A stretch of 64,000 bases of DNA, taken from contig NC_042997.1 of assembly GCF_006345805.1 (NCBI RefSeq), forward strand, positions 73,222,001-73,286,000, in the 5' to 3' direction. Under the pieces are notes generated by a model. The model saw only the letters and a program-made list of their open reading frames with translations. It made no database searches and had not been told where the DNA came from. Each line of letters opens with the position of its first letter. Position 1 is the stretch's first letter. Of the stretch, positions 9,363-41,589 are shown piece by piece. Source of the DNA: Octopus sinensis (taxonomy: Eukaryota). Made by a program: the position numbers and the translations under genes.

Positions 9363-12300
9363 TGTTGTGGAAGGATTCCACTCCCACCCAAGTGACTAAA
9401 ATTGGATTAATACATTGCTATAAAATAAAGAACTGTGAGCAATTGATGGTAAGTAGTCCACTGCTAAGGCGGGGCAAGCTGGCAGAATCGGTAGTGCGCT
9501 GGGCGAAATGCTTAGCGGTATTTCGTCTGCCGCTACATTATGAGTTCAAATCACGCTGAGGTCGACTTTGCCTTTCATCCTTTCGGGGTCGATTAAATAA
9601 GTACCAGTTACGCACTGGGGTCGATATAATCGACTTAATCCGTTTGTCTGTCCTTGTTTGTCCCCTCTGTGTTTAGCCCCTTGTGGGTAGTAAAGAAATA
9701 GGTATTTCGTCTGCCGCTACGTTCTGAGTTCAAATCCCGCCGAGTTCGACTTTGCCTTTCATCCTTTCGGGGTCGATTAAATAAGTACCTGTTACGCACT
9801 GGGGTCGATATAATCGACTTAATCCGTCTGTCTGTCCTTGTTTGTCTCCTCTGTGTTTAGCCCCCTTGTGGGTAGTAAAGAAATAGGTAAGTAGTTCACT
9901 GCAAGCCGTTGGCATAGAGCGGTTATTGTCGTGTAACAGTAATTTTAGCGCGTCATATGAATACCATCTTCACATCCCCTGGTTCATAAATTATTTATCT
10001 AACACCAGGATATAATTGTAGCGACAAGTTACTCGAAGTTTGCGTTGGACGTTTAGAATTTGTTTTTGTACGAAATCAAAGAAAAAATCGTTTTGACATA
10101 GAAGATTTATTGGCTTCCGTAGTGCAGTTGCAACAACAACATCTGCTGCAACAGCAACTACAATAGCAACTACAACAGCAACAACAACGACACCAACAGT
10201 TGCTGGAATTAATATTCAAGAAATTTGAAAATATTTTAGGTCCTTACCCGCCAGACAGCGTGGCAAGATTTTGCCGATGGAACTAGGTGAGATTTTTTTT
10301 CAATGAATCAATTAATTTTTATCGAAAACTTTCAGTGAAAGAGGTTCCCTGTTCAATGCTCCCTGGCAATGTTTAAATTTGTCGAAAAAGATTGCCAAGA
10401 TTTCGTCACCTATGCCGGAGTTGTTAACAGATAGTGTGAAAAATTCAAATTAAATGAATTAACCCCGGACATGTTCCAATGTCTAATATTGTTTCAAGGG
10501 CTAACTGCAAGCAAAGATACAGATATACGTTCCCGGATATTAACAAAATTAGAACAGTACCTGTGTCGACCGGTAACGGATATGAAAAAAGAGAAAAATG
10601 TCATGAACGAATTCATGTTATGGGTACGGTGGTCTACATTTTAAAAAGTAACAGTCCATTTAAAAATATAAAATACTTCAAGTGAAGTAAGATAGGTCAT
10701 AAAAATCACACTGTAAAACAAAACCTGAAAAACGGTTCAACAGAAAAAATAACTTTAAAGGTTATCGGTGGCAAAAAACGAGCCTCAAAGGAAATTTATG
10801 TATGTAAAAGTCGATAACACAAACGTAAAGTTACTGATGGATACGGGCAATATCTCGATAATTAACACAGATACATGGGGGAAATCAGGAGACCTAAATT
10901 AAAAGAAACTTCGAAAATTGCAGATGGTGTTTAAGGAAGAAAATTATACTTTAAGGCGAGATGTTAAGTGACATTACATTTCGTGGAAAAACCTTAAAAG
11001 CCAAAGTTTCTAAATTGGATCTCTCTGACGCATACCTATAAATTAGAGTAGACGATGAATGCTCTAAATAGCTAACAATTAACATACATAAAAGACTGTA
11101 TAAATACAACAGGTTAACATTTGTCTTAAAAGTCGCACAGACAATTTTTCAACAGATAATGGATGCAACGTTTGCGGTCTGTGAATTTGCAATTCCATAT
11201 CTGGATGATATACTCGTAAAAAGCGAATCCCAGGACCAAAACGTACAGCACGTACGATATGTGTTCGAAAAAATTAGAGCTTACGGCTTTACACTGAGTG
11301 AAAAAAGGTGTGAAATTTTCTTACCGAAAATAACATATCCAGGACAAATCATTGTCAGAAATGGACGTCGACCAGATCCGATGAGGCTAGACGCAATTAA
11401 AGATATTCCTCTTCCGACAAATATTGCGATCTTACAAGCTTTTTTGGGACTGGCAAATTATTGCTAAAATTATATTCTAAATATGCATAAGGTAAGAATC
11501 CCACTAAATAACCTACTAAAAAAAGATATAAAGTGGAATTGGTCTGAAGATTGTCGGAAGGCTTTCGACGAAATAAAAATGATATTAACGTCAGATTTGT
11601 CGTTAGCACATTTTGATTTTACAATGGAGATTGTAACGGTATCGTAGCAGTAATGCTAAATAAATATAAGAATGGTTACATGAAGGCGGTGGTTCATACC
11701 TCACGTTCTCTGATATCAGCAGAAAAAATTACAGCCAAATTGAAACAGAGCTCTAGTGATTATTTATGCTGTAAAAAAATTTCATAGTTTTTACACAGTA
11801 AAAGTTTTTTACTTCAGACTGACCAACGTCCGTTATAATTTATATATGGGTGGAAGAAAGGAATCCCTGCCCATACTCCTAATAGGTTGCAACCCTGGAA
11901 TACTCTATTATCAAACTATGATTTTGAAATGGAATATATACCATCTAAGAAATTAGGACACGCTGATTGCTTATCTGCGAGCAGAAAATTAAATTAAAAA
12001 TGCTTTGTGTAATTTCATATGTGAATTGCCACATTACAAGGCACACAATTAAAAGCGAAAAATGATCAATTCCTAAGAAAAAATTAAAGATATGCTGAAG
12101 TCTAAATGAGATAAAAATATGCACAGCACAAATGCGAACCTATTCTCAATGTGAGACGGTGCGTTGATGTATGCACAAAGAATCAGCAAATATACTTCAA
12201 AATTCTTCAAGTTAGGCGAAGTTTTTTTGTAAACCTATAGATATGGTAAAGAAAGATGGGAGAACGGTGTAATTATTAAACAACTTGGAAGAATGATATT

Positions 12301-21848: not shown

Positions 21849-22055
21849 TGTACACATATACATTCATGTATATATATATATATAGCGTGGGCAGTATATT
21901 TAAAAAAACCGTTACGGTTGCAATATACATCATATAATTAAGGGCTAAAGAGGGTTATTCTAAAGCCAAATACACTGTTTTATCCACTTATAATCCGCTT
22001 GTTACAGGAAAATTGAAACTGAAAACGGGCAACTAACCTTTAGAAAATTTAAATT

Positions 22056-22131
22056 TCGTTATCTCTATATTGAATCAATTTCGGACTTAATCTTATAAAA
22101 AGATATATTCCTTCTTCAGTAGAAATTTCGA
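22056..22131 (-). ncRNA. Type I hammerhead ribozyme fold, array copy M1 (predicted cleavage after A at 22068)
   Basis: Minus strand reads tcg-aa-ATTTCTA-CTGAAGA-A-GGA...TCC-GAA-ATTG-att-CAAT-A-TAGAGAT-aa-cga: full core, stems I/II/III and an AUA site. Confidence 0.85.
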
Positions 22132-22547
22132 TGGGATATAATAAAATACTCACGTATGATCATGGAAAAAGCACAAGCTAAAAACATAACTACACTTGAG
22201 TACATCATTTATATCTAAAAATAAAAATTCTTTGGTCAGCCTCAGAAAACAACGTCCAGACCTTTCGCCGCTACAAATTGTAATGGTTACCAGTCCTCCT
22301 GTAGCAAGCATCGAGTTTACTACTAAGCAATATAGGATGAAGTCCCTTACTCTACAGCAAAGGAATTCATCAGGAAGCGTGGGCAGTATATTTAAAAAAA
22401 CCGTTACGGTTGCAATATACATCATATAATTAAGGGCTAAAGAGGGTTATTCTAAAGCCAAATACACTGTTTTATCCACTTATAATCCGCTTGTTACAGG
22501 AAAATTGAAACTGAAAACGGGCAACTAACCTTTAGAAAATTTAAATT

Positions 22548-22623
22548 TCGTTATCTCTATATTGAATCAATTTCGGACTTAATCTTATAAAAAGATATAT
22601 TCCTTCTTCAGTAGAAATTTCGA
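22548..22623 (-). ncRNA. Type I hammerhead fold, array copy M2 (cleavage after 22560)
   Basis: Identical to M1. Confidence 0.85.
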
Positions 22624-23040
22624 TGGGATATAAATAAAATACTCACGTATGATCATGGAAAAAGCACAAGCTAAAAACATAACTACACTTGAGTACATCA
22701 TTTATATCTAAAAATAAAAATTCTTTGGTCAGCCTCAGAAAACAACGTCCAGACCTTTCGCCGCTACAAATTGTAATGGTTACCAGTCCTCCTGTAGCAA
22801 GCATCGAGTTTACTACTAAGCAATATAGGATGAAGTCCCTTACTCTACAGCAAAGGAATTCATCAGGAAGCGTGGGCAGTATATTTAAAAAAACCGTTAC
22901 GGTTGCAATATACATCATATAATTAAGGGCTAAAGAGGGTTATTCTAAAGCCAAATACACTGTTTTATCCACTTATAATCCGCTTGTTACAGGAAAATTG
23001 AAACTGAAAACGGGCAACTAACCTTTAGAAAATTTAAATT

Positions 23041-23116
23041 TCGTTATCTCTATATTGAATCAATTTCGGACTTAATCTTATAAAAAGATATATTCCTTCT
23101 TCAGTAGAAATTTCGA
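23041..23116 (-). ncRNA. Type I hammerhead fold, array copy M3 (cleavage after 23053)
   Basis: Identical to M1. Confidence 0.85.
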
Positions 23117-23271
23117 TGGATATAAATAAAATACTCACGTATGATCATGGAAAAAGCACAAGCTAAAAACATAACTACACTTGAGTACATCATTTATATC
23201 TAAAAATAAAATTTATGTTTTTAGCTTGTGCTTTTTCCATGATCATACGTGAGTATTTTATTTATATCCCA

Positions 23272-23347
23272 TCGAAATTTCTACTGAAGAAGGAATATAT
23301 CTTTTTATAAGATTAAGTCCGAAATTGATTCAATATAGAGATAACGA
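23272..23347 (+). ncRNA. Type I hammerhead fold, array copy P1 (cleavage after 23335)
   Basis: tcgaaatttcta CTGAAGA A GGA atatatctttttataagattaag TCC GAAA ttgattcaat A tagagataacga. Confidence 0.85.
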
Positions 23348-23763
23348 AATTTAAATTTTCTAAAGGTTAGTTGCCCGTTTTCAGTTTCAATTTTCCTGTA
23401 ACAAGCGGATTATAAGTGGATAAAACAGTGTATTTGGCTTTAGAATAACCCTCTTTAGCCCTTAATTATATGATGTATATTGCAACCGTAACGGTTTTTT
23501 AAAATATACTGCCCACGCTTCCTGATGAATTCCTTTGCTGTAGAGTAAGGGACTTCATCCTATATTGCTTAGTAGTAAACTCGATGCTTGCTACAGGAGG
23601 ACTGGTAACCATTACAATTGTAGCGGCGAAAGGTCTGGACGTTGTTTTCTGAGGCTGACCAAAGAATTTTTATTTTTAGATATAAATGATGTACTCAAGT
23701 GTAGTTATGTTTTTAGCTTGTGCTTTTTCCATGATCATACGTGAGTATTTTATTTATATCCCA

Positions 23764-23839
23764 TCGAAATTTCTACTGAAGAAGGAATATATCTTTTTAT
23801 AAGATTAAGTCCGAAATTGATTCAATATAGAGATAACGA
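23764..23839 (+). ncRNA. Type I hammerhead fold, array copy P2 (cleavage after 23827)
   Basis: Identical to P1. Confidence 0.85.
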
Positions 23840-24255
23840 AATTTAAATTTTCTAAAGGTTAGTTGCCCGTTTTCAGTTTCAATTTTCCTGTAACAAGCGG
23901 ATTATAAGTGGATAAAACAGTGTATTTGGCTTTAGAATAACCCTCTTTAGCCCTTAATTATATGATGTATATTGCAACCGTAACGGTTTTTTTAATATAC
24001 TGCCCACGCTTCCTGATGAATTCCTTTGCTGTAGAGTAAGGGACTTCATCCTATATTGCTTAGTAGTAAACTCGATGCTTGCTACAGGAGGACTGGTAAC
24101 CATTACAATTTGTAGCGGCGAAAGGTCTGGACGTTGTTTTCTGAGGCTGACCAAAGAATTTTTATTTTTAGATATAAATGATGTACTCAAGTGTAGTTAT
24201 GTTTTTAGCTTGTGCTTTTTCCATGATCATACGTGAGTATTTTATTTATATCCCA

Positions 24256-24330
24256 TCGAATTTCTACTGAAGAAGGAATATATCTTTTTATAAGATTAAG
24301 TCCGAAATTGATTCAATATAGAGATAACGA
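24256..24330 (+). ncRNA. Type I hammerhead fold, array copy P3 (cleavage after 24318)
   Basis: Core intact; one A fewer in the stem I internal loop. Confidence 0.83.
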
Positions 24331-24746
24331 AATTTAAATTTTCTAAAGGTTAGTTGCCCGTTTTCAGTTTCAATTTTCCTGTAACAAGCGGATTATAAGT
24401 GGATAAAACAGTGTATTTGGCTTTAGAATAACCCTCTTTAGCCCTTAATTATATGATGTATATTGCAACCGTAACGGTTTTTTAAAATATACTGCCCACG
24501 CTTCCTGATGAATTCCTTTGCTGTAGAGTAAGGGACTTCATCCTATATTGCTTAGTAGTAAACTCGATGCTTGCTACAGGAGGACTGGTAACCATTACAA
24601 TTGTAGCGGCGAAAGGTCTGGACGTTGTTTTCTGAGGCTGACCAAAGAATTTTTATTTTTAGATATAAATGATGTACTCAAGTGTAGTTATGTTTTTAGC
24701 TTGTGCTTTTTCCATGATCATACGTGAGTATTTTATTTATATCCCA

Positions 24747-24822
24747 TCGAAACTTCTACTGAAGAAGGAATATATCTTTTTATAAGATTAAGTCCGAAAT
24801 TGATTCAATATAGAGATAACGA
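24747..24822 (+). ncRNA. Type I hammerhead fold, array copy P4 (cleavage after 24810)
   Basis: Core intact; one T>C in the distal part of stem I. Confidence 0.83.
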
Positions 24823-25239
24823 AATTTAAATTTTCTAAAGGTTAGTTGCCCGTTTTCAGTTTCAATTTTCCTGTAACAAGCGGATTATAAGTGGATAAAA
24901 CAGTGTATTTGGCTTTAGAATAACCCTCTTTAGCCCTTAATTATATGATGTATATTGCAACCGTAACGGTTTTTTTAAATATACTGCCCACGCTTCCTGA
25001 TGAATTCCTTTGCTGTAGAGTAAGGGACTTCATCCTATATTGCTTAGTAGTAAACTCGATGCTTGCTACAGGAGGACTGGTAACCATTACAATTTGTAGC
25101 GGCGAAAGGTCTGGACGTTGTTTTCTGAGGCTGACCAAAGAATTTTTATTTTTAGATATAAATGATGTACTCAAGTGTAGTTATGTTTTTAGCTTGTGCT
25201 TTTTCCATGATCATACGTGAGTATTTTATTTATATCCCA

Positions 25240-25315
25240 TCGAAATTTCTACTGAAGAAGGAATATATCTTTTTATAAGATTAAGTCCGAAATTGATTCA
25301 ATATAGAGATAACGA
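25240..25315 (+). ncRNA. Type I hammerhead fold, array copy P5 (cleavage after 25303)
   Basis: Identical to P1. Confidence 0.85.
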
Positions 25316-25732
25316 AATTTAAATTTTCTAAAGGTTAGTTGCCCGTTTTCAGTTTCAATTTTCCTGTAACAAGCGGATTATAAGTGGATAAAACAGTGTA
25401 TTTGGCTTTAGAATAACCCTCTTTAGCCCTTAATTATATGATGTATATTGCAACCGTAACGGTTTTTTTAAATATACTGCCCACGCTTCCTGATGAATTC
25501 CTTTGCTGTAGAGTAAGGGACTTCATCCTATATTGCTTAGTAGTAAACTCGATGCTTGCTACAGGAGGACTGGTAACCATTACAATTTGTAGCGGCGAAA
25601 GGTCTGGACGTTGTTTTCTGAGGCTGACCAAAGAATTTTTATTTTTAGATATAAATGATGTACTCAAGTGTAGTTATGTTTTTAGCTTGTGCTTTTTCCA
25701 TGATCATACGTGAGTATTTTATTTATATCCCA

Positions 25733-25808
25733 TCGAAATTTCTACTGAAGAAGGAATATATCTTTTTATAAGATTAAGTCCGAAATTGATTCAATATAGA
25801 GATAACGA
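25733..25808 (+). ncRNA. Type I hammerhead fold, array copy P6 (cleavage after 25796)
   Basis: Identical to P1. Confidence 0.85.
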
Positions 25809-25949
25809 AATTTAAATTTTCTAAAGGTTAGTTGCCCGTTTTCAGTTTCAATTTTCCTGTAACAAGCGGATTATAAGTGGATAAAACAGTGTATTTGGCT
25901 TTAGAATAACCCTCTTTAGCCCTTAATTATATGATGTATATATATATAT

Positions 25950-25983
<34 letters not shown>

Positions 25984-26569
25984 ATATATGTATGTATGTA
26001 TGCATGTATGTATGTATGTATGTATGTATGTATGTATGTATGTATGTATGTATGTTTTCGGATTATGGCTGCTGTTGCTTAGTGAGTGGGATTGACTCAG
26101 TGCACAGCCTTTCCTCACTTAAAAAAAATCTTCCTGCACAGGCATTGCAGGGTAACAACATTGTTCATGATTGTTGATGGTGCTGTGAGTCTCAATTGAA
26201 TGGCTGGCTGTAGCCTTAAAAAGCAAATAAAATTCACATTCGATCACAGCACCTTTAACGGTTAAGCCTCGTGCAATGGCCATACTTGATAACGAGGGAG
26301 CAGCCATCGTGTATGTATGTACGTATATACACACACGAAGATAAATTGTGTGGGCAAACAAAAATATGAGATACTGTCTAGTGGTTTTTTAAAATTTTGA
26401 TAAGCCTGGTACTTATTTTATCAGTTTCTTCTTGTGAAACCTGTAAGTTTTAGGGATGTAAATAAACGAACACCAGTTGTGAGGCAGTGATGAAGGAGAA
26501 ACACAAAGATACACACACAGACTTACATATATACATACACATATATACGATTGATTTCTTTCATTTTCT

Positions 26570-26714
26570 GTCTACAAAATCTTCTGTCAAGTCTTTGGTT
26601 GGTCTGAGGCTATAGCAGAAGACACACGTCAAGTCACCACACAGTGGGACTGAACCCAGGACCATGTGTTTTGGAACGAAGTTTGTTACCACACAGCCAC
26701 ACCTGCACCTATGT
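26570..26714 (-). mobile_element. tRNA-derived SINE with an inverted duplicate of its head at 26884-26939
   Basis: Family homology; arms 54/56 identical. Confidence 0.85.
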
Positions 26715-27129
26715 ATGCGAGTGTGTGTATGTGTGTATGGGTGTATATATGTATGTACGTACATATGTGAATGTATATGAGTATATATTACATGTACATC
26801 TACACATATACATGTATATATATACATCTATATGTATAGAAATAAATGTATATATACAGCTATGCACATATACACACACACAAACATAGGTGCAGGTATG
26901 GCTGTGTGGTAACAAACTTAGTTCCAAAACACATGGTCCTCGGTTTAAATTTAAATTTAAAATAATAAGTGTGAGAAATTGAATATTAATTTGATGAATA
27001 TGAATTGAAAACCAGTGGTGTAGCATATAAGACCATAGCGGATCTTCTTCTAGCAAAATGGATGTCCACTGTTAATGGTTCAACCCTCTAATATAATAGT
27101 TTGACTTTAATAGTTTCAGTATTAAGGTG

Positions 27130-27700: not shown

Positions 27701-27744
27701 GCACGTATATTTACTTTGACGGATATTTGTCCTCATCTTGTTTG

Positions 27745-27795
27745 TTGTTAACTCAACGTTTCGGCTGATATGCCCTCCAGCCTTCATCAGGTTGG
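27745..27795 (-). ncRNA. Penelope-type hammerhead core (stem I degenerate) at the 3' end of a tRNA-headed element
   Basis: Minus strand: CTGATGA A GGCTG gagggcatat CAGCC GAA ACGT T. Confidence 0.6.
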
Positions 27796-27870
27796 GGAAA
27801 TTTCGAACCTGGATTCTTATTCCTAAGGTATTTTTTCGATGTTGTTATAATTATTATTATTATTATCATG

Positions 27871-28174: not shown

Positions 28175-31041
28175 GTTAGGAAAACCTTAAGGTTGACAAG
28201 ACTACCAAACCTACAAAAACCCAAAAATTAAAGAAAAAATATATGAAAACTATACTTGATATTGATGCCACCATAGAAGCCATCAAGCAAAAACTGCCCG
28301 CATAGCGAGGTATGAAAAGTGTGCTAGATTCTTCAAAGACAACAACATGTTCAAAAATAGCCCCAAAAATGTTTACAGGAAGATAGGGAACACACCAGTT
28401 ACTGTAAAGTCTGTACCATCAAAAGACGAAGTGCACGGTTTTTGGAATAAAATTTGGGCAGAAGAAAAAACACACAACGAAAAGGCCCCTTGGATTGATA
28501 GAATAGCTACCGACTTATACTCCTTAGAGGAGCAAAAGTGGGGGAGGGTGTCAAGGTAGAAGATGTAAGATCTGCTCTCAGAAGGTCAAGCAAATGGAAG
28601 TCTCCGGGAAAGGATAAAATTCCTAACTTCTGGTTGAATGCCTTCCCAGAGAGCTATGAATTGCTAACAGAACTTTACAATGATGTTTTGCAACACGCTA
28701 GTAGGATGCCTGCTTGGCTAGCTATTGGTTTAACATTCTTGCTTCCAAAAAGTGAAGAAACAAATTAACCAAGATACTATAGACCCATAACCTGCTTAAC
28801 AACTATGTATAAAACGCAAACATCTGTCCTGATGGAATATACCTATAGTTTTTTAATAGACATCAGCATATTCCCTAATGAACAGAAAGGATGTAAACGT
28901 GGATCCTATGGTTGTAAAGATCAGCTACTCATCAATAAGATGATCTTAGAAGATTGTCACAAACGACACAAAAACTTGTCAATAGACTGGATAGACTATA
29001 AAAAGGCTTTTACTAGCCTACCACATAGCTGGATAAAGAAATGCCTAGAAATGTACAAAATAGCGCCTACTCTGCGAAACATTTTGTCTGTAAGTATGAG
29101 ATCATGGAGAACCACACTAACTTTGAACAGTGACGATGAATCTCTAAATGCTGGTGATGTAAAAATTTCACGTGGCATTTTCCAGGGCGACTCACAATCA
29201 CCACTCCTCTTTTGTTTAGCCTTAATAACTCTCTCAAAATTGCTCAATGACGCACAGTACGGATATAAAATATTGGATAAAAATATAAATCATCTCATTT
29301 ACATGGATGATTTAAAGCTCTTTGCAAAAAATGACCAACAACTCAATTGTTAAACAATTCACCGATGACATCAGAATGCAATTTGGCCTCGATAAATGTG
29401 CAAAAGCTACCTTTATCAAAGGAAAAATGACAGAAACATCTAACGTTTATCTCGACCAGCAGAATGTCATAAAAGAGTTAGACCCAGCGGAGAGCTACAA
29501 GTACCTAGGGGTAATTGAAGGAGATGGAATAAGGCATTTAGTGATGAAGGAATGGATCATGAGAGAATGTTATCGCAGAGTAAGAGCAATACTCAAGACA
29601 GAGCTGAATGCAAAAAACAGGATCGAAGCGATCAATGCATTAGCCATACCAGTTGTGACTTACAGTTTCAATATCGTTAACTGGTCAATTACTGAAATAT
29701 GTAATCTTGACAGAAAAATACGAAAACTGTTGACAATGCATAGAATGTACCACCCTAAGGCAGATATAGATCGACTTTATCTACCAAGAAAATAGGGAGG
29801 CCGTGGACTTTTACAACTGGCAATAACAGTGAAGGTTGCTACAATTGGCCTAGACACCTACCTGAAAAATCTGAGGACTGGATCTTAAAACCTGTCTCAA
29901 AACATGAAAACAAGAAAGCATCATACTCAGTAACAAAACAGGCAAAGGAATATCTAAATGAATTCCAAATATAACAAATTCCGGAATTAGACACACAAGA
30001 AACAAGCAAAGAAAAAGCTAAGCGCATGAAAACCCGTGCCAAAACTGCTGCCTTATATATTCTGAATGCTAAATGGCAAGAAAAACCTCTCAATGGCAAA
30101 TACCCAAAGAGAGTGAATAATGCAGATGTTGACAAATCCCTGACCCATCAATGGCTAATGGCCTCTGGCTTAAAATCTGAAACAAGGGTTTATCATAGCA
30201 GCTCAAGTACTACCAGGCCAACATATTAAAGAATGGCAGTAGCCCAACATGTCGAGTATGTCAACAACAAAATGAAACCATTGATCATGTTGTCTCCAAG
30301 TGCGGTGTTCTTGCGCCTACAGAGTATCTCAACAAGCATAATAGAGCTGCACAATATATTCACTGGGTAATTTGCAGAAGGCTGGACTTACCCCATGATA
30401 AAAACTGGTGGGACTTACCCCATGATAAAAACTGGTGGGACTTACCCCATGATAAAAACTGCAGTGCTTGAAAGTGACCACATCTCACTCCCCTGGAACT
30501 TCACCATTCAAACTGACAGAAAGATAGACGCCAATAGGCCAGACATCATAGTAAAAGACTTCAGACAAAAAACATGCCTCCTCATTGATATGACTGTCCC
30601 AATCGATATAAATGTATCTGTCAAGACCTACCAGAAACTGAGCAAATATAAAGATCTTGAAATAGAAATCAGCAAAATGTGGAACCTGAAGACTAAAACA
30701 ATACCTGTTGTCATAGGTGCTCTGGGAATGATAGCAAAACGGGCTGATTGCTACCTAACTCAGATACCAGGAAACCCAAAAATGGCAGAAATTCAAAAGA
30801 TAGTGCTCATGGGAACTGCTCATATCCTACGCAAAATACTTTCTTTGTAATCTCAAGTTTTAAAACAAGCATAATTTTCGTATGGCTTTTTAGGCATTCA
30901 CTATTACAACACTAAGTACAAAACCAAATATATGGCACCCTAGTCATAACACCAACAGGAACTTCCAACTTGTTGTCTCTTGAGGTCTCTGGGTGAGACT
31001 TGGAGCCAGCTTGTGCAAATGTAAAGCAAAAGTCAAACACC
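28175..31041 (+). mobile_element. 5'-truncated R4/Dong-clade LINE (RT + restriction-like endonuclease), frameshifted, with (TAA)n tail 31042-31207
   Basis: EQKGCKRGSYGCKDQLLINK, WIDYKKAF, GIFQGDSQSP, YMDDLK, ANRPDIIVKD..LLIDMTVP, KYKDLEIEI motifs. Confidence 0.93.
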
Positions 31042-32399: not shown

Positions 32400-34250
32400 A
32401 GACGAAGAGAGGTGGTGTTGAAAACAAACAGATGTATTAGTTTAACGCTCGGGAAATGAAAAAGTCTTTAACGTATCGAACCTTCGCTCTTCCACAGAAA
32501 GAAACAAGGAGAGAAAAAATGTGTGTAGTGGCTACCGATCTTTCATGGCGAATGCCGGACAGAAGGGTCACACAGGAGAGCGAAGAAGTTGGGGGAGATA
32601 ACAAAGTAGTAGTGATCCCAAAACGAAGGTGCACGTGTGTGTAAGAGAGTACGCATGTGCGTGTGAAAGAGGGCTGGTGATCATGACGAGTGCATATGTG
32701 TATGTGTAGGTGTGAAAATGTGGGGATGGGAATTGGTCAGTGCTGGTGTGTTGTGATGTGTTCTGTGGTATGGTGTAGTGTGGTGTGGCGTGATGTTTTG
32801 GGGAGGTGGAGGAGGCGAGAGTGGGGAAAGCACGGGTGGGGTGTGGGTTAGGCTGAGGGTTGGGTAGAGTTGGGGTAGGTGGGTAGGCAGAGGTTGGGGG
32901 TAGAGGTGAGGCATGTGGGAGAGGGAAGGTGGAGTAGGAATATGTAGGGGTGGGGTGGGCTTATGGGGAGGTTTGACGATGAAGGGGAAGGGGAAGATGG
33001 GTATGAGAGAAGAGAGAAAGAGAATAAGAGAGAAGAGAGAAAGAGAGTAGGGGGAAGAGAAGTAGGAGTCGGAGCAAGAGAGGTGAGGTGGGTGGGAGGA
33101 AGTAGGAGGAATGGGAGAGAAGCAAGAGGAGGACGTTAGATAAAGAGGGGAGGAGAGTTGAGCCCATGTGGTACAAAGGAGCGAAGAGAGAAAATTAATC
33201 CCTGTTCACGGCGCAAACGGGAGTCCGGACTGCTTCTGTGCAAGGACAATCTGAACACGGACAGATGTTGCAAAGAATGACCGGTAGAGCGGAAATGGCG
33301 TGAGATCGGGGTGTCATTGCCGAGGCGGACTGGAGATGCCGGAAGGTTCGGAGTATGGTGCGTTGGAGAGGTAGAGTGTTGGGGTGGTAAATGAGGGGAA
33401 AAGTGAGGCAAGAGACTGCTAGGCGTGTTGGGGGGGGAGAGAGCAGATGCACGGTCCACGGAACGTATTTTGGCAAGGGCGGTGTGTATAGTGGTGAGGG
33501 GATATCCCCGTAGGATGAAATGGCGAGCCATGAGTTGAGACTGAGTCTCAAAGTCATGGTCGTCACTATAGAGCCTGCGTAGACGGAGGAATTGGGAATA
33601 GGGGATGGAAAGACTGGTGTGTTTAGGGTGGGAGGAGGAGAAGTTGAGGTATGAGTGTGATTCTGCGTGTTTGTAGTGGATGGAGGTGGTTGGAGTGGAG
33701 TGATAAATGCTGACTGAAATGTCAAGAAAGGAGACAGAGTTGGGCAGGAGAAGTGGAGGGCAGGATGGAGAGATTTGACAAAAGAGAGGAAGAAGTCTAG
33801 ATGTTCGCGGGAGAGTGAGTTTGAATCGATACAGTCGTCAATATAACGGCCATATAGTTCGGGAGTGGGACCAGTGAAACTTGAGAATATTTGGGCCTCA
33901 ACATAACCAACGAACAGGTTCGCATAGTTGGGGCCCATTATCGTTCCCATGGCCACTCCCGAATATTACTGGTAGAAATCGCCCGCGAACGAGTAGCAGT
34001 TGAGTGAGAGGACAAGTTCAGCCAGACGAACGAGTGTGGAGGTATCAGGTTGGGGGTTGGGTCGGAGGTCAAGGAAGTGTTTCAGTGCACGCAGCCCCTC
34101 GAGGCGAGGGATCACCGTGTAAAGGCTTTGGATGTTGAGAGTGAAGAGATGTTTAGAGGTGCCAGGAGGGAAGGAGAAAGAGTTGAACAGACGAAACCTA
34201 TCCTTATACTGATCTATCAAAGTCAAATCTAAATCTGAAACCGGGTACTG
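32400..34250 (-). mobile_element. Penelope-like retroelement (RT + 3' region + pLTR-like end)
   Basis: LFTLNIQSLYT, AMGTIMGPNYANLFVG, GRYIDDC, REQGLIFSLRSFVPHGLN motifs; hammerhead-like motif at 32466-32501. Confidence 0.88.
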
Positions 34251-35193
34251 CCCCTTAAAACATTCACACGGAATCTAAACATATACCATCATTCTTTACG
34301 CGCGCAATTATGTACATCCCATGACTGTAATTTCAATCATCTTCCAGGGAAAAACGCTCAGTTAATAAAGGGAACTCCAATCATAGAACGTCTACTACAA
34401 CACCAACATCAACATCAAAATGAATTCGTAACACTAAAATTTGCCGCTATTCCTAACACTGGGGATTATGACTACATGACGATTGAATATTTACGCATCT
34501 CTGCGGGGCTTAACGTAAATTCAAAACAACACATTTAGTCATTCTCTATAAAACACACCCAGTTGAAGCCGTACCGGCATGTACTCTTCCCGCAACTCGG
34601 GTACCTAGAAAGAACACAGCGAGCGCAAAAACAAATGAAAAAACTAATTCAACAGTCCCAACACAAAGTTTTTCCACCAACTCGGAAAACTGGAGAACAT
34701 TTTTTTAGCAACACTAAGAAATCAAACAACTGACAAAACTGTCCCTGTAACTAAACCGTCAGCCTGTTAGGTTCATGCGGAACCAAACAGAGCTATCACA
34801 CAATACCAAAACCTGTCGCTACTCCAGTGCAAAAACTAATCTTCTCGCTGCCAATAAGCTATAAGTTTCTTTCGAAGACTAATCCAGTCGCAAAAGTTTT
34901 CTGAGTGCACAAGGTAAATCTCCATAACACTGTTGAAGCAGTACCGGCATGTACTCTTCCCGCAACTCAAAAAGATGGAAAGGTTCGATTCATTTATGAT
35001 TGGGTAGCTGACTACCCTCACCATATTCCTCTCTCCGTTCTTACTGAGACATATCTTTACTTCAGCTTTCAAATGAGAGTTGTTAAGTCGAGTCTCAGTA
35101 AGGACGAAGAAAGGAATATGGTACGGTACATTATCTCAGGAGGCAAGAATACAATCTTGCTTTTCTGTCATGGGGGGACTGACTAAACACTAC

Positions 35194-36504: not shown

Positions 36505-38751
36505 TATCATGTTGTCACAATTAAATTTACTAAATTTTGTGAAACAAGGGAAAAGAAATAATTACTGAGAAAAGCAATTTTTGTTACCGCAAATTTACGC
36601 CATGAATTTTCATGATAAAAATATCCTGGGGCTTAAAGATAATCCTTCTGTAGTGAGTCAGTTCAAGGTGGCAATGTCTGTTGGGTTTATAGTCATATAC
36701 AGTTAATGTTATTAAACTAACGAGGCATTGATTATACCATTATGATATTTACGCAATGTTTACCCTGTACATTGTATAAAGTGTGCATGCAAGACATAGA
36801 GTAGGTTTTGAGAATACTCAAACTCAGTTATTCATACCATAAAAGTAGCTAGAACAAATTAGCATTAAATGAGTGCTTCTTCGTTTGGTGCTGCCTCACA
36901 TATACTCGTATAGTATGAAATTGTCTGATTAAAGCGATTGCGATATTTATTGAAACGCGGATAATGAGTGAGCACAGAACCACATATTGTGTGGTACTTT
37001 ATCATATAACCTTTTGATTCATAGCCTGAATTATGCTCGATTCTCTTCCTTCGAAAATATAAATGCCACTCAATTTGTGGTTTTCTGATGAAGTCAGAAA
37101 TAATTAACATGGAAACACTAATGTTCTGAGTCAAAGACCTTGCAATATTTTACTATTAACGCTGATAAATCCATGTAACCAGCAAGTTATTACAAACAGT
37201 AATTGAAGAAGAATTGCACATTGATAAATCAATTTCAAAATTTAATTTATTTGGTTTTCTTCAAATATCGAAAACTGTCGCTGCCTTATTCATTTCACAA
37301 AATCCAAAGTCACATTTGCCGGTCGATATAATAAATTGGAGGTGATTTTCTATTATCTTCTTCCTCCATTTCTAAACTTCCTCTATATCATTACCGACAT
37401 CTCCTATCAACATCACTTCGGTAAAAACAATCCTAACCCAAGTGGAAAAGTTATTCATCTGTCGAAGCTCATTTGTTATACTCACGAAGAATAGCATGCA
37501 AATATAAGTAGTTTTCGTATTGTTTTTGTATTTCGTTCAAAATAATTGTTTCCGACTCTCTAAATTGCTACTGAAGTCTTCTTTATATTCCAATAATTAA
37601 TATACTTTGTTTTCACATAATATTTATGGTAATATATTTCAAATTGGTTTAATGTTTAGTAATTCATTGGATATGTAACTATATTTAGTCGTCAAGATAA
37701 GTGTTTGTTTCACGATGTCGTTTAAACATCCATTTATCACCATATCATAAGTTTTTCATTCCTAAATTTTAGTTTCTCTTAATAATCTCATTGTTGTTGT
37801 TGCTTAACCTTAGGTCAGCCCTGATAGAAAAACTCTATGATCATAGCATGCCATCCTTGTTCACCTGGTCTCTTCTTCTGCATTGCATTACCATACTTTG
37901 CAAATTGCCTTCTTTTAAGAGGGTAATAATCGATTTGAAGGAGCTTCGCCATTGTTTCTAGCAGGTCGACCAACGATGTAATAGAATTTTTCATAAGATT
38001 AATGAGGTGTTTTAACAATTTTAGGTATATACATGTATACTCAACCGTAAGGAATTCACGAAAGAGATGCTATAGCGAGAAGCTGAAAGACGATCACCCT
38101 TAATTTCGTGCCAATCTAATGCAAGTACTGTTGCTTTATTAGCTGACAATTTAAACTAAAGTGTGATGTTGGCTCAGACTTTAAACATCTATGAAAATTT
38201 GAACCCCAAAACCATTGCGTTGGCAATTTTGCTGCTTCATAATACAGGTAAAAATCCGCTGCGTTGGTGACATGAAAGTATGTATGTTGACAGCAATTGC
38301 ACCCAATCTGTGTAGTTAGTTATATATTTCTAATTGTATGAATAGATATCGTGGATATTTAACCCGTGTTAAAACTGGAATGAAAGGTTATTCTGCCTAA
38401 CATTATAGCAACAATAACTTCAATGTACGTAATATTCTACTTCTTGAATATTTATAAAACTTTAATAACGATTATAACAGTAACTCAAATAAAGAACTAG
38501 AGATGTGTGATTTGATCACTTAATACTATTCTAAGCATTACCTCAATATATTCTTCAGAAAATAGCAAATTTTGTGAACATATAGTACAAGTACAACTTT
38601 TGTTTACAAACAGTTTCATCTTGAAGCAAACTCAAGCAGTTTTCACTATGACAAACACAAACTCCTAAAAAATCCAATACATTAAGCATTCGGCTGAAGA
38701 TATCTCCACCGGGATAAAGAAAAGAATATATGATTATTATTTATAACTCAC

Positions 38752-38932
38752 CATGATGACAGTAACCGCCATTGTTAATCGAGTAACACCACCAAAAAAA
38801 GATGCTGCACCAATTAACGCAAAGACTCCAGGATCCGACCAATTCCAGTAATGGGGGTCATTACTACCAAGCGACTTCAATATATTCACTAAGGTAATTC
38901 CGACCAATCTACCACACAGGCCTCCGATAAAG
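38752..38932 (-). CDS. CLC exon F (181 nt): FIGGLCGRLVGITLVNILKSLGSNDPHYWNWSDPGVFALIGAASFFGGVTRLTMAVTVIM
   Basis: Acceptor tacttcag, donor atg|gtgagt; DPGxFALIGAASFxGGVxRxT is a CLC hallmark. Confidence 0.95.
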
Positions 38933-38974
38933 CTGAAGTAAATATGCATGTTATATTTTATACATGTATGTATG

Positions 38975-39128: not shown

Positions 39129-39472
39129 ATATATATATATATATGTATAGGTAAGTCATAAGTAAATGAGAAATAGTTTCTCATAGTTAATATACAAGTG
39201 ACATAGTGCTGCAAGATGATATTATTTCGCAAATTCTGATTACTAAAAGAATTCAATAAAGGTTCTGTCTTACGGTGTGCAGTTGTCACAGTTATACCTT
39301 GTTGTGGTGAAGATTTAATATTACTATGCCCAATTGAAAAGTGGTATTAATGGAATTTGTTCTTTAAAATGATACTCAGGGAAGCCTATGTACGATAGTG
39401 AACAACATTGTTCATACATACATACATACAAACATATGTGTGAATGTATGTGTGTATGTGCGTATGTATGCA

Positions 39473-39577
<105 letters not shown>

Positions 39578-39629
39578 ATAAAACGGTAAGATACAAAAGA
39601 AAGAAAGAGACCTCAATATTATGTAAATA

Positions 39630-40740
39630 GAGGAAATACGTAAGGCCCACGTATTTCTTCGTCGAAACGGTGTCTTTAGTGGTTATAGAGTTTACGGTAG
39701 CTTCATATATGATGGTCTTGGACATGCAAGCTCCATTTAGCGGGCACAATTCTTTATTCCTGCATGAACAGCTGTTTTCTTGTGTTTTTTGTATGTTATG
39801 TTTGATTATGTTTTTAAAATTGGTAGTTGAACTAAAACTAATTTTTAAATTGTGTCTATTGAAGAGTTTCCTATAAGTATGGTTAACTGGAAAATGTCTA
39901 TCTATCAGAGCTAGGAAATATTTACCTATATTGAAGGCCACCTCGGGTGTAAACCAGATGACCTTCCTATTTCTATTATTCCTTTTCCTTACTGTTGGGC
40001 TAGTGATAGGTGTATATTTTATTTTTTCGCTAAAACCACTATCTTTTAAAGCCTTATTATAAACTGGGACAACGCTATTGAAGATGTCCTTATCAGAGGA
40101 GAGGCTAGAAATCCGCTTACTAATATTTTTAACTAAATTTTTGAATACTATAGGGGGATGGCATGAACCTACATTAATATAACTTAGTCTATCATTGGGC
40201 TTCCTATAAGGCTTATAAATATTCTTATTAAGATCTAAGGAAACGTCTAAGAAATTGACAACCTTTAGGTTAGTATCTATAGTTATACTAAGTCCGAAGT
40301 ATTTCATTAACTGGATAATATCCTTCCTAAAACGATCTTGTGCTGGTCCATTTGTATTAGCTGTTAAGGCGAGGGCATCATCTTTGTAGATGGCGAAATG
40401 TACGTTAGGGAATGTCTTACCTAAGGTATCTAGGAGAAAAAGTCCAATTAGATCACAGATGCCTGCCCCATCATATGAACCCATGCTCACTTCGAAAGCG
40501 CCCTCTGTGTCGGTGTTTTTTACCCACTTTGCGTTCTCACTGAAAAGTAAGGTCTTTCTAGCATGGAAGATTATGTCCTTATCATTGGTACTAATTTCTA
40601 TGAAGTCGCTAGCGAAGATGAGGGCTTTATCTAGCAGTTCTCTAGAGATAGAGGCATAAAAATCAACAATATCGAATTGTGTAAACCTCGTTTTTTTCTT
40701 ATTCTTAAAACTCAGAGATTTATCTTGACTACCGAGTAAA
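39630..40740 (-). mobile_element. Penelope-like element (Naiad-like RT + start of GIY-YIG), truncated at both ends by (TA)n
   Basis: Continuous frame QFDIVDFYASI...MGSYDGAGICDL...YKDDAL...FLDV...SCSCRNKELCPLNGAC...YVGLT. Confidence 0.88.
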
Positions 40741-40790
40741 GTAACATATTATTGTATGTATATATATATATATATTATATATATATATAT

Positions 40791-41393: not shown

Positions 41394-41589
41394 GAAATTA
41401 ATTTGTGTAAAAATCAATGAGTACTCCGTCTAATGAGAGGCTAATATTGCTATAACTGTTTCATATTACTAATAGTTTCACGTACACATGTACGTTCATC
41501 AGGCACCGATAAACGTACTTATGTACTTAGTAGTGCATATAACGCATGTCGTATGAATCACTTATAGTAATATATGCATCGTGAAACTC

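What the first reader, a model, noticed from the sequence alone, without database searches (positions are those of the whole stretch)
21884..25941. Tandem ~493-bp repeat in which every unit encodes a complete hammerhead ribozyme: candidate cephalopod non-LTR retrozyme / circular-RNA system
Seen in sequence: each unit contains stem I ATTTCTA/TAGAGAT (7 bp, extended by an AA/AA loop and TCG/CGA) and the core CTGAAGA with an extra A. Stem II is GGA/TCC with a distal ATCTT/AAGAT helix, followed by GAAA, stem III ATTG-att-CAAT (quasi-palindromic) and an AUA cleavage triplet. All core positions are invariant in 9 copies, with predicted cut sites 491-493 nt apart. Established: tandem repeats with one type I hammerhead per unit are the architecture of metazoan non-LTR retrozymes (described in coral, mussel, axolotl), which self-cleave to monomers, circularise and are thought to be copied by an autonomous RT; an extra A after A9 is a known natural variant. 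Inference: this is a young retrozyme family with a monomer longer than the ~170-400 nt I recall as typical. It has no recognisable protein product, and Penelope-like RTs, abundant in this window, could plausibly mobilise it. I cannot confirm it is undescribed.
Basis: partly seen in the sequence, partly recalled or inferred. Interest (0 to 1): 0.95.

Follow-up and report, generated by a model that had tools for sequence, protein, structure and literature searches.

The report
Hammerhead-ribozyme tandem repeat (retrozyme) array
A 4-kb block of nearly identical ~492-bp repeats, each carrying a credible self-cutting hammerhead RNA motif, looks like one more animal "retrozyme". That class of small mobile elements, thought to spread as RNA circles, is already known, so the find is real but ordinary.

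Summary
The sequence features are real. Nine copies of a complete type I hammerhead (HHR) motif sit in ~492-bp units that are at least 99% identical. A unit of this composition would carry so good a motif by chance about 2.5e-5 of the time. Three HHRs lie on the minus strand (21884-23211) and six on the plus strand (23213-25941), joined 5'-to-5' and embedded in a (TA)n microsatellite. "Invariant cores" carries no weight, because the whole unit is near-identical. No Rfam hammerhead model matches. The motif has the features published for Penelope-like-element (PLE) HHRs: an extra nucleotide after A9, a long helix II and a quasi-palindromic helix III. Two copies are predicted to fold as a double hammerhead. 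The monomer RNA is unusually structured on the HHR strand only (z -5.7 against -2.35). Best reading: a young non-LTR retrozyme array. Its tandem, head-to-head layout in a microsatellite resembles PLE-type insertions. A 493-nt monomer is within the published range (51-972 bp). No related copy, RNA evidence or cleavage test was available, and the cephalopod origin could not be checked. Verdict: a new member of a known kind, of modest interest.

The parts
21884..23211 (-). Left arm: 2.7 units (160-nt 5'-truncated unit, two full units of 493 and 492 nt, and a 184-nt 3' partial unit) with the HHR polarity on the minus strand. Its 5' end lies at the central junction and its 3' end at 21884.
   Evidence: TRF; unit dissection and alignment; GC/AT skew changes sign at about 23.2 kb.
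23213..25941 (+). Right arm: 5.5 units (123-nt 5'-truncated unit, five full units of 491-493 nt, and a 145-nt 3' partial unit) with the HHR polarity on the plus strand. Its 5' end lies at the junction and its 3' end at 25941.
   Evidence: TRF. Arms are up to 980 nt about 100% complementary to the left arm.
23126..23261 (.). Head-to-head (5'-to-5') junction of the two arms, with a single orphan base at 23212. The left arm starts at unit position 334 and the right arm at unit position 371. The resulting palindrome produces sub-threshold 'mir-2513' hits on both strands.
22056..22131 (-). HHR copy 1 (C3 at 22119, A17 at 22068). Predicted cleavage between 22068 and 22067 on the minus strand.
22548..22623 (-). 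HHR copy 2 (C3 at 22611, A17 at 22560).
23041..23116 (-). HHR copy 3 (C3 at 23104, A17 at 23053).
23272..23347 (+). HHR copy 4 (C3 at 23284, A17 at 23335). Predicted cleavage 23335|23336.
23764..23839 (+). HHR copy 5 (C3 at 23776, A17 at 23827).
24256..24330 (+). HHR copy 6 (C3 at 24267, A17 at 24318). It has a 1-nt deletion in the AA internal loop of extended stem I.
24747..24822 (+). HHR copy 7 (C3 at 24759, A17 at 24810). T>C at 24753 breaks pair 2.6-1.6 of stem I, leaving 5 contiguous bp.
25240..25315 (+). HHR copy 8 (C3 at 25252, A17 at 25303). Predicted cleavage 25303|25304. This is the reference copy used for folding.
25733..25808 (+). HHR copy 9 (C3 at 25745, A17 at 25796).
25304..25796 (+). 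Reference monomer as it would be released by two cleavages (493 nt). Stem I (unit positions 1-7 with 435-441) closes the molecule. Linear MFE is -130.7 kcal/mol (z -5.5). Circular MFE is -126.5 kcal/mol, 64% paired (z -5.7).
   Evidence: The complement strand gives only z -2.3.
25648..25729 (+). 82-nt imperfect hairpin within each unit (unit positions 345-426), just 5' of the HHR. Both arms' 5' truncation points (unit positions 334 and 371) fall at or inside it.
21869..21884 (.). Left flank: a (TA)n tract abutting the array (21884 itself is also counted as the first base of the left arm), preceded by TG/TA-rich sequence.
25942..26055 (.). Right flank: (AT)n followed by (TATG)n microsatellite. 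The two flanks share only this low-complexity sequence, so no target-site duplication is discernible.
39327..40748 (-). Context: a truncated Penelope-like element remnant (RT plus the start of a C-terminal GIY-YIG-like nuclease), cut off by a microsatellite. It shows that this class of RT exists in the genome. It is dead and shares no sequence with the repeat unit.
   Evidence: Pfam RVT_1 E=0.022. About 700-aa homologues align through RT and an IVY..YIGLT..R..NH nuclease motif. blastn of the unit finds nothing here.

Best explanation
The block is a young array of a non-autonomous, non-LTR retrozyme: a short non-coding repeat in which every unit carries one type I hammerhead ribozyme of a single polarity.

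Proposed cycle:
1. Multimeric RNA of the HHR polarity is transcribed rightwards from the right arm and leftwards from the left arm (inferred).
2. Each HHR cuts after the A of AUA, for example at 25303|25304, releasing 491-493-nt monomers (inferred from the motif). Helix III is weak and quasi-palindromic, so cutting is predicted to work best when two HHRs of a multimer pair into a double hammerhead (predicted by cofolding).
3. The monomer folds compactly and stem I holds its two ends together, so a host RNA ligase can circularise it (the fold is shown; ligation is inferred by analogy with published retrozymes).
4. A reverse transcriptase supplied in trans, most plausibly from a Penelope-like element, copies the circle or multimer into tandem cDNA at a nicked (TA)n microsatellite.
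5. Priming from both sides of the break would give the two arms joined 5'-to-5' (inferred from the anatomy of the locus).
For: Motif:
- All core positions, G10.1-C11.1, A15.1-U16.1 and H17 are present, with helices of 7 bp (I), 3+5 bp (II) and 4 bp (III), in all 9 copies. There are no other descriptor hits in 128 kb of scanned strand.
- The chance of so good a motif is 2.5e-5 per unit and 0 of 300 windows.
- Each deviation from the textbook HHR is documented in natural active HHRs: the AUA triplet, an extra A between A9 and G10.1, and a long interrupted helix II (PMC1636495).
- An extra nucleotide at 9/10.1, G10.1-C11.1, a long helix II and a palindromic helix III/loop 3 are the published hallmarks of PLE-associated HHRs that act as dimers (PMC4209133).

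RNA structure:
- Cofolding two 83-nt segments gives, as the MFE (-32.3 against 2 x -14.3 kcal/mol), a double hammerhead with a 10-bp intermolecular helix III.
- Structure is strand-specific: z -5.5 and -5.7 (0 of 100 and 0 of 150 shuffles as stable) on the HHR strand, against -2.3 and -2.35 on the complement.
- Stem I closes the monomer.

Architecture:
- Tandem units, 33.5% GC, no coding capacity and no tRNA-like part.
- Near-identity of all units in both arms, with 8 variable columns, fits one recent multimeric cDNA insertion.
- Partial tandems, an inverted 5'-truncated copy joined head-to-head, a one-sided 30-40-bp tail and microsatellite targets are the described features of PLE insertions (PMC8557442). 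Here there are tandems, head-to-head arms, a 39-nt difference between the two 3' ends, and (TA)n on both sides.
- An RT plus GIY-YIG (PLE-type) remnant lies in the same window.
Against: - No Rfam hammerhead covariance model matches, even at E<=10 on 111 nt.
- Helix III has a predicted probability of 0.004 in the single-copy ensemble, and the HHR fold is 3.3 kcal/mol above the MFE.
- No second locus and no diverged relative could be found. That covers the window, the protein collection searched via the unit's ORFs, and metagenome, viral and prokaryotic contigs. There is therefore no covariation evidence, no evidence of mobility and no evidence that the core is under selection.
- One copy carries a stem I-breaking substitution.
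- Units R1 and R3 share two variants that the others lack. The array is therefore not a pure product of one rolling-circle event.
- The unit shares no sequence with the PLE remnants in the window. Three loci fetched around RT homologues, only two of which (L012, L013) hold homologues of the PLE-like ORF (L001 flanks an R2-like RT homologue), showed no HHR.
- There is no transcript, cleavage or circular RNA data.
Confidence: 0.7

Rival explanations
1. An ordinary minisatellite or satellite DNA that happens to contain a hammerhead-like string. Under this reading there is no ribozyme activity and no RNA life cycle, and the array grew by unequal crossing-over.
For: No Rfam hammerhead hit. Weak helix III. 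Only one locus seen. The a/b variant pattern among units suggests some DNA-level duplication. The first-stage scan may have looked at very many windows.
Against: A motif this good is expected 2.5e-5 times per unit. All of its deviations are the specific ones known from natural and PLE-type HHRs. The HHR strand, and not its complement, is far more structured than shuffles.
Confidence: 0.07
2. Not an independent retrozyme family but a fragment of a Penelope-like element: amplified pseudo-LTR or UTR sequence left by a complex tandem/inverted PLE insertion whose coding part was lost or never copied.
For: The HHR has PLE-type hallmarks. Tandem plus inverted 5'-truncated architecture and a microsatellite target are PLE insertion features. 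A 2026 preprint finds retrozymes to be sister to PLE pLTRs. One search shows head-to-head PLE copies in locus L013.
Against: There is no RT/EN coding sequence between or next to the HHRs. The full units (seven complete, plus four partial) are complete cleavage-to-cleavage monomers. The unit has no similarity to either PLE remnant in the window. Helix I (7 bp) and helix III (4 bp) are longer than in the minimal PLE HHRs. In practice this rival differs from the best explanation only in whether the unit now propagates on its own.
Confidence: 0.13
3. The retrozyme reading holds, but the inverted two-arm structure is not an insertion scar. It would instead be a later DNA-level inversion or fold-back rearrangement, or a long-read assembly chimera at a palindrome.
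For: The junction falls at an 82-nt hairpin-forming part of the unit, which could promote replication template switching. Near-perfect palindromes are known trouble spots for assemblers (PMC8557442 notes assembly problems at such insertions). Shared variants show some post-insertion change.
Against: The arms have unequal length (1.33 and 2.73 kb) and different 5' and 3' end points. The unique flanks are not inverted copies of each other, so this is not a simple fold-back duplication of the locus.
Confidence: 0.3
4. A DNA copy of an exogenous viroid-like or delta-like circular RNA replicon that was reverse-transcribed and captured in the genome.
For: Its size (~490 nt), its compact fold and its hammerhead resemble viroid-like RNAs.
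Against: A ribozyme is present in one polarity only. There is no ORF with homologues. The composition is AT-rich and host-like. There are no matches in viral contigs.
Confidence: 0.02

Closest known systems
Metazoan non-LTR retrozymes (coral Acropora, mussel Mytilus, axolotl; Cervera & de la Pena 2020, PMC7229834)
   Same: Short AT-rich tandem repeats with one type I HHR per unit, no LTR or coding capacity, highly self-paired monomer RNA, and co-occurrence with PLEs. In axolotl the HHRs need to act as dimers.
   Different: Sequence unrelated. The HHR is not of the canonical form (6-bp helix I, 4-bp helix II, loop-loop contacts) and is missed by Rfam. The unit (493 nt) lies above the 170-400 nt of that paper but inside the 51-972 bp range of the 2026 preprint. 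The locus shows two inverted arms. Expression and circles are untested here.
Hammerheads of Penelope-like elements (min-HHRs in pLTRs; Cervera & de la Pena 2014, PMC4209133)
   Same: Extra nucleotide between A9 and G10.1, G10.1-C11.1, a long helix II, a palindromic helix III region, and predicted action as a double hammerhead. That paper also notes HHR pairs on opposite strands 100-700 bp apart.
   Different: Not located in repeats flanking an RT-EN ORF. Helix I is 7 bp (against 4-5) and helix III is 4 bp plus a triloop (against 0-2 bp).
Classical HHR-bearing satellite repeats (Dolichopoda cave-cricket pDo500, newt satellite 2, Schistosoma Sm-alpha), recalled from my own knowledge and now regarded as retrozymes (pDo500 is mentioned in PMC4209133)
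   Same: [quoted passage not shown] Dimeric hammerheads occur in newt.
   Different: Different taxa and sequences. No transcript data here.
Complex tandem/inverted insertions of Penelope-like elements (Craig et al. 2021, PMC8557442)
   Same: Partial tandems, an inverted 5'-truncated copy adjoining the 5' end, an extra 30-40-bp stretch at one end only, and insertion into microsatellites ((TA)n for Naiads).
   Different: Here the inserted sequence is a non-coding 493-bp unit, not an RT-EN element. A 'tail' is ill-defined for a circular or multimeric template.
Plant LTR retrozymes (Cervera et al. 2016, PMC4918200)
   Same: Non-autonomous elements with HHRs that give circular RNAs.
   Different: Those have type III HHRs in LTRs, PBS/PPT, 600-1000 nt circles, GC above 55% and Gypsy-type mobilisation. 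None of that applies here.

Membership tests
Hammerhead ribozyme, type I | Conserved core C3-U4-G5-A6-N7-G8-A9, G12-A13-A14, and H17 (not G) at the cleavage site | tested here: met
   CUGAAGA, GAA and A17 are present in all 9 copies. One extra A lies between A9 and G10.1, a variant known from CChMVd(+) and PLE HHRs.
Hammerhead ribozyme, type I | Three helices around the core, with G10.1-C11.1 and A15.1-U16.1 and helix I open | tested here: met
   Helix I is 7 bp plus 3 bp, helix II is 3 bp plus 5 bp, and helix III is 4 bp with a triloop. Helices I and II have pair probabilities of 0.92-0.99. Helix III has only 0.004 in a single copy but forms a 10-bp intermolecular helix in the predicted dimer.
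Hammerhead ribozyme, type I | Match to curated covariance models (Rfam Hammerhead_1/3/II/HH9/HH10) | tested here: not met
   No hit at gathering score nor at E<=10 on 4.8 kb or on 111 nt.
Hammerhead ribozyme, type I | More than chance: the motif is improbable in sequence of the same composition | tested here: met
   Relaxed matches occur 0.057 times per 64-kb window, and 0 of 300 windows have one as good. Per unit the rate is 2.5e-5 in 40 Mb of simulated sequence.
Hammerhead ribozyme, type I | Compensatory changes in the helices among homologues | not testable with these tools
   Units are at least 99% identical. No relatives were found in any accessible collection.
Hammerhead ribozyme, type I | Site-specific self-cleavage with Mg2+; helix I/II tertiary contacts | not testable with these tools
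   This needs a bench assay. No recognisable canonical loop 1/loop 2 contact could be assigned by eye.
Metazoan non-LTR retrozyme | Tandem repeat of short monomers (about 50-1000 bp) with a type I HHR in every unit | tested here: met
   Definition as in the 2026 preprint and PMC7229834.
Metazoan non-LTR retrozyme | Low GC (below 45-50%); no LTR and no coding capacity | tested here: met
   GC is 33.5%. The longest ORFs are 91-98 aa and have no homologues. No tRNA-like part. PBS/PPT were not searched for specifically.
Metazoan non-LTR retrozyme | Monomer RNA highly self-paired, with its ends juxtaposed | tested here: met
   64% paired, z -5.5 to -5.7 on the HHR strand only, and stem I pairs unit positions 1-7 with 435-441.
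Metazoan non-LTR retrozyme | Expressed as linear and circular monomer RNAs | not testable with these tools
   No transcriptome access.
Metazoan non-LTR retrozyme | Dispersed at many genomic loci (evidence of mobility) | not testable with these tools
   There is only one locus in the 64-kb window, and the source genome is not searchable here.
Metazoan non-LTR retrozyme | Co-occurrence with Penelope-like elements in the genome | tested here: met
   The ORF at 39327-40748 (minus strand) aligns with about 700-aa RT plus C-terminal GIY-YIG-like proteins. A second remnant at 33.1-34.3 kb is PLE-like by eye only, and BLASTP against P0137 was not significant.
PLE-associated hammerhead (in a pseudo-LTR) | Located in terminal repeats flanking an RT-EN ORF | tested here: not met
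   Only 440 nt of non-coding sequence lies between successive HHRs. There is no similarity to the PLE remnants.
PLE-associated hammerhead (in a pseudo-LTR) | Extra nucleotide at 9/10.1, G10.1-C11.1, long helix II, palindromic helix III region, dimeric action | tested here: met
   Read from the sequence. The predicted MFE dimer is a double hammerhead. Criteria are from PMC4209133. Dimeric action itself is predicted, not shown.
PLE-type insertion architecture | Partial tandem plus an inverted 5'-truncated copy joined head-to-head | tested here: met
   The arms meet 5'-to-5' at 23212, truncated at unit positions 334 and 371. Description is from PMC8557442.
PLE-type insertion architecture | A 30-40-bp tail at one end only; microsatellite target | tested here: inconclusive
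   The left arm's 3' end extends 39 nt further into the unit than the right arm's (unit positions 184 and 145). (TA)n and (TATG)n lie on both sides. With a single locus the family's canonical end is unknown, and (TA)n bias was reported for Naiad PLEs, which lack HHRs.
Viroid-like / Avsunviroidae-type RNA replicon | Self-cleaving ribozymes in both polarities | tested here: not met
   There is no HHR on the complementary polarity of the unit, even with a relaxed descriptor, and no other ribozyme family in Rfam.

The most novel reading that the evidence does not exclude
The locus would be a preserved integration scar showing how animal retrozymes move. Under this reading a circular or multimeric retrozyme RNA was copied by target-primed reverse transcription from both sides of a break in a (TA)n microsatellite. 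That would give two near-identical tandem arms joined 5'-to-5' with a one-sided 39-nt extension, which is the signature of Penelope-like-element integration. It would be direct structural evidence for PLE-mediated retrozyme mobilisation. The two retrozyme papers I checked argue for this only from co-occurrence and sequence similarity. As a by-product, read-through transcription of the two arms would make a roughly 1.3-kb near-perfect double-stranded RNA.
Probability: 0.3. Interest if true: 0.5.

Novelty: new member of a known kind. Interest (0 to 1): 0.3.

Why it matters
If active, this adds a lineage-specific retrozyme family with a PLE-type hammerhead that curated covariance models miss. Rfam-based counts of hammerheads in such genomes would then undercount them. 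The head-to-head, microsatellite-embedded layout also gives a concrete prediction for how retrozymes integrate, which can be checked genome-wide. Beyond that it is another example of an established class, not a new mechanism.

Tried and rejected
1. Rfam at gathering score and at E<=10 on 64 kb, 4.8 kb and 111 nt gave no hammerhead. The only hits were sub-threshold miRNA-like ones caused by the palindromic junction and the microsatellites.

2. I searched for other copies of the unit and found nothing usable:
- blastn (word size 7) against the window found nothing.
- Exact look-up and homology search of the unit's 91-aa and 77-aa ORFs in the 15-billion-protein collection found nothing.
- A pattern scan of metagenome contigs gave 10 hits, all chance matches inside bacterial coding genes.
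- Scans of viral contigs and prokaryotic genome contigs gave 0 hits.

3. I tried to use PLE homologue loci (L012, L013) and an R2-like RT homologue locus (L001) as positive controls for HHR detection. Neither Rfam nor my descriptor found an HHR there, although the descriptor script stopped before reading L013. No control was therefore obtained.

4. A relaxed 'minimal HHR' scan of the window found only two core-like strings. One is at 41502 (minus strand) and the other at 27790 (minus strand), inside SINE-like sequence. Neither has a helix I partner, so I rejected both as ribozymes.

5. I asked whether the RT next to the array (28.2-30.9 kb) is Penelope-like. It is not: it has an R2-type CCHC plus PD..D/E..K nuclease region, and a homologue carries zf-RVT.

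6. I tested the 33-kb remnant for PLE membership with Pfam and with BLASTP against a PLE homologue. Neither was significant, so that call remains by eye only.

7. No tRNA-like part or Pol III-type element was found in the unit. The HHR strand contains many T4-T7 runs, which argues against Pol III transcription; this is read directly from the sequence.

8. A literature search for a described cephalopod satellite or retrozyme of this kind found none in the held library.

9. The organism could not be identified. Homologue tables carried no informative names for close hits.

Full report
**1. What is in the sequence**

Tandem Repeats Finder reports two adjoining arrays, not one. They are 21884-23211 (period 493, 2.7 copies, 99% matches) and 23213-25941 (period 492, 5.5 copies, 99% matches).

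The 52-nt string from CUGAAGA to the AUA triplet occurs nine times. Three copies are on the minus strand (C3 at 22119, 22611, 23104). Six are on the plus strand (C3 at 23284, 23776, 24267, 24759, 25252, 25745). None is expected by chance.

The inverted-repeat search finds arms up to 980 nt that are about 100% complementary. GC and AT skew change sign at about 23.2 kb. The block is therefore two arrays in opposite orientation whose hammerhead-sense strands diverge from a junction at 23212.

I cut the arms at the predicted cleavage sites.
- The left arm is 160 + 493 + 492 + 184 nt.
- The right arm is 123 + 492 + 491 + 492 + 493 + 493 + 145 nt.
- Both arms are 5'-truncated at the junction, at unit positions 334 and 371.
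- Their outer 3' ends lie at unit positions 184 and 145, a 39-nt difference.
- Only 8 alignment columns vary in the whole 4 kb, and most are homopolymer-length differences.
- Units R1 and R3 share two variants that the other units lack.
- One substitution (T>C at 24753) breaks a stem I pair in one copy.

It carries no information about selection.

The flanks on both sides are (TA)n and (TATG)n microsatellite and share nothing else.

**2. Is the hammerhead real?**

- helix I: AUUUCUA/UAGAGAU, 7 bp with one G-U, extended through an AA/AA loop by UCG/CGA;
- core: C3-U4-G5-A6-A7-G8-A9, then one extra A;
- helix II: GGA/UCC with G10.1-C11.1, a 4x4 internal loop and a distal 5-bp AUCUU/AAGAU helix;
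- G12-A13-A14;
- helix III: AUUG-auu-CAAU with A15.1-U16.1;
- A17 in an AUA triplet.

No Rfam hammerhead model matches. That holds at gathering score on the window and at E<=10 on 4.8 kb or on 111 nt.

I therefore wrote an RNAmotif-style type I descriptor. It requires the core, an optional nucleotide after A9, helix I of at least 4 bp, helix II of at least 3 bp and helix III of at least 3 bp. It finds only these nine sites on both strands of the 64-kb window.

In first-order Markov sequence with the window's composition, relaxed matches occur 0.057 times per window. None of 300 windows has a match as good as the observed one. In 40 Mb of sequence with the unit's own composition, the rates per 493-bp unit are 4.8e-4 (relaxed) and 2.5e-5 (as good as observed). 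The motif is not a chance string.

The deviations from the textbook motif are all documented in nature.
- AUA precedes the site in ELVd(+), sCYDV-RPV(+) and cscRNA(-).
- CChMVd(+) has an extra A between A9 and G10.1.
- sCYDV-RPV(+) has a long helix II interrupted by internal loops (PMC1636495).

More to the point, four features are the published hallmarks of the hammerheads of Penelope-like elements. [quoted passage not shown] Those hammerheads are thought to work as dimers (PMC4209133). This likely explains the Rfam miss, because those models describe canonical hammerheads.

Thermodynamic prediction agrees.
- In a single 83-nt copy, helices I and II are very stable (pair probabilities 0.92-0.99).
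- Helix III has probability 0.004, and the hammerhead fold lies 3.3 kcal/mol above the MFE.
- Two copies cofold, as the MFE (-32.3 against 2 x -14.3 kcal/mol), into a double hammerhead with a 10-bp intermolecular helix III.

**3. The rest of the unit**

A monomer cut at both sites (25304-25796) folds at -130.7 kcal/mol as linear RNA (z -5.5; 0 of 100 dinucleotide shuffles as stable). As a circle it folds at -126.5 kcal/mol with 64% of bases paired (z -5.7; 0 of 150). The complementary strand reaches only z -2.3 and -2.35.

Stem I pairs unit positions 1-7 with 435-441, so the two ends of the monomer are held together.

The unit has 33.5% GC and no tRNA-like part. There is no ribozyme on the other polarity. 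Its ORFs are at most 98 aa and have no homologue among 5.8 billion protein clusters.

**4. Context**

The RT nearest the array (28.2-30.9 kb, plus strand) is R2-like, not Penelope-like. It has RVT_1, a CCHC finger and an RPD..D..K nuclease region, and zf-RVT is found in a homologue.

A 474-codon open frame at 39327-40748 (minus strand) is a truncated Penelope-like element. It scores weakly on RVT_1 (E=0.022). It aligns with about 700-aa proteins that continue into a C-terminal GIY-YIG-type nuclease motif (IVY..YIGLT..R..NH). One homologue locus shows head-to-head copies.

A second remnant at 33.1-34.3 kb (minus strand) looks Penelope-like by eye (GVAMG..RYIDD, FLDISV..SSHP) but gave no significant test result. 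Other RT pieces are LTR-type. 'Abundant Penelope-like RTs' is an overstatement, but the class is present.

The unit shares no sequence with these remnants. The cephalopod origin could not be checked.

**5. What it most likely is and how it works**

The published definition of a metazoan non-LTR retrozyme has these parts:
- a short, AT-rich, non-coding tandem repeat with a type I hammerhead in every unit;
- a highly self-paired RNA;
- co-occurrence with PLEs (PMC7229834; bioRxiv 10.64898/2026.07.22.740005).

All the features that can be tested on sequence are met. I therefore read the block as a young retrozyme array (confidence 0.7).

Shown here: the motif, its non-randomness, the strand-specific fold, the end-closing stem I and the anatomy of the array.

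Inferred:
- transcription into multimers;
- cleavage after AUA, predicted to be better through double hammerheads;
- ligation to a ~492-nt circle by a host ligase;
- reverse transcription in trans.

The anatomy adds one thing that the two retrozyme papers I checked do not discuss. The described signature of PLE insertions comprises partial tandems, an inverted 5'-truncated copy joined head-to-head, a one-sided stretch of 30-40 bp and a microsatellite target (PMC8557442). This locus shows all four. It fits copying of a circular or multimeric template from both sides of a break in (TA)n.

I hold this sub-claim at about 0.3-0.4, for three reasons:
- it rests on a single locus;
- a 'tail' is ill-defined for a circular template;
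- a later DNA rearrangement at the unit's 82-nt hairpin, or an assembly chimera, cannot be excluded.

**6. Rivals**

- A satellite with a fortuitous motif is unlikely (0.07), given the statistics and the strand-specific structure.
- A PLE pseudo-LTR fragment rather than an independent retrozyme (0.13) differs mainly in whether the unit now propagates on its own.
- An endogenised viroid-like replicon (0.02) fails on the single-polarity ribozyme and on the absence of viral matches.

**7. Novelty and score**

Retrozymes are established in cnidarians, molluscs, insects, amphibians, fish and reptiles. Monomer lengths of 51-972 bp are reported. The giant-squid genome paper already lists 235 Rfam Hammerhead_1 hits.

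I found no paper in the held library that describes this repeat or cephalopod retrozymes as such. That is absence from one library, not proof of novelty.

This is a new member of a known kind. Its interest is modest (0.3), for two reasons: it carries a PLE-type hammerhead that Rfam misses, and the insertion scar is a testable pointer to the integration mechanism.

The main limits are that no second copy, no homologue, no transcript and no cleavage assay was available. As a result, selection on the core and mobility both remain untested.

Noticed in passing
window 28200-30900 (+); also 674-1048 (+) and 60948-62240 (+): Frameshifted R2-superfamily-like LINE remnant: RVT_1, a CCHC finger 'CRVCQQQNETIDHVVSKC' and an 'RPDIIV..D' nuclease region. 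It contains three tandem 30-nt copies encoding 'TYPMIKTGG' at about 30380-30470. Related RT and zf-RVT pieces lie at both ends of the window.
   Followed up: partly
window 39327-40748 (-): A 474-codon open frame of a Penelope-like element (RT plus the start of a GIY-YIG-like nuclease). It lacks about 270 N-terminal codons and is cut off inside the nuclease by a TA/TATG microsatellite. Homologues are about 700 aa and carry Pfam HTH_animal (PF26215).
   Followed up: yes
window 33100-34300 (-): Degraded, frameshifted RT-like remnant with GVAMG..RYIDD, FLDISV and ..SSHP motifs and a proline-rich, low-complexity tail. It looks Penelope-like by eye, but Pfam and BLASTP gave nothing significant.
   Followed up: partly
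window 41440-41510 (-): CTGATGA-ACGTAC-ATGT-GTACGT-GAAA: a hammerhead-core-like string with a perfect 6-bp helix II, about 750 nt upstream of the Penelope-like ORF. No helix I or III partner could be found. Unresolved; possibly chance.
   Followed up: partly
window 27740-27830 (-): CTGATGA-A-GGCTG...CAGCC-GAAA lies next to a tRNA T-arm-like GGTTCGAAAT. It is probably a SINE-like fragment rather than a ribozyme. ARAGORN calls no tRNA there.
   Followed up: partly
window 38740-38970 (-): An exon-like stretch matching the voltage-gated chloride channel family (Pfam Voltage_CLC, E=8e-9). The window probably lies in or near a CLC-type gene.
   Followed up: no
window 48779-49210 (-); 11072-11464 (+); 52637-53092 (-): Other transposon debris: a DDE_3 (Tc1/mariner-type) transposase fragment, an LTR-type RT fragment and an RT-associated RNase H fragment.
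   Followed up: no
window 26653-26778 and 26820-26945: Inverted repeat with 126-nt arms, 80% complementary and 41 nt apart, about 0.7 kb right of the array. It is MITE-like or hairpin-forming.
   Followed up: no
window 23126-23261: Sub-threshold Rfam 'mir-2513' and 'MIR6024' hits on both strands are produced by the palindromic junction of the two arms, not by a microRNA gene. The 'mir-297' hits at the array's edges are TA/TATG microsatellite.
   Followed up: yes
L013 2333-7728: In a related genome, three copies of the same Penelope-like family sit as two minus-strand copies followed by a plus-strand copy, head-to-head at about 5900-6000. This illustrates the tandem/inverted insertion pattern of these elements.
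   Followed up: partly
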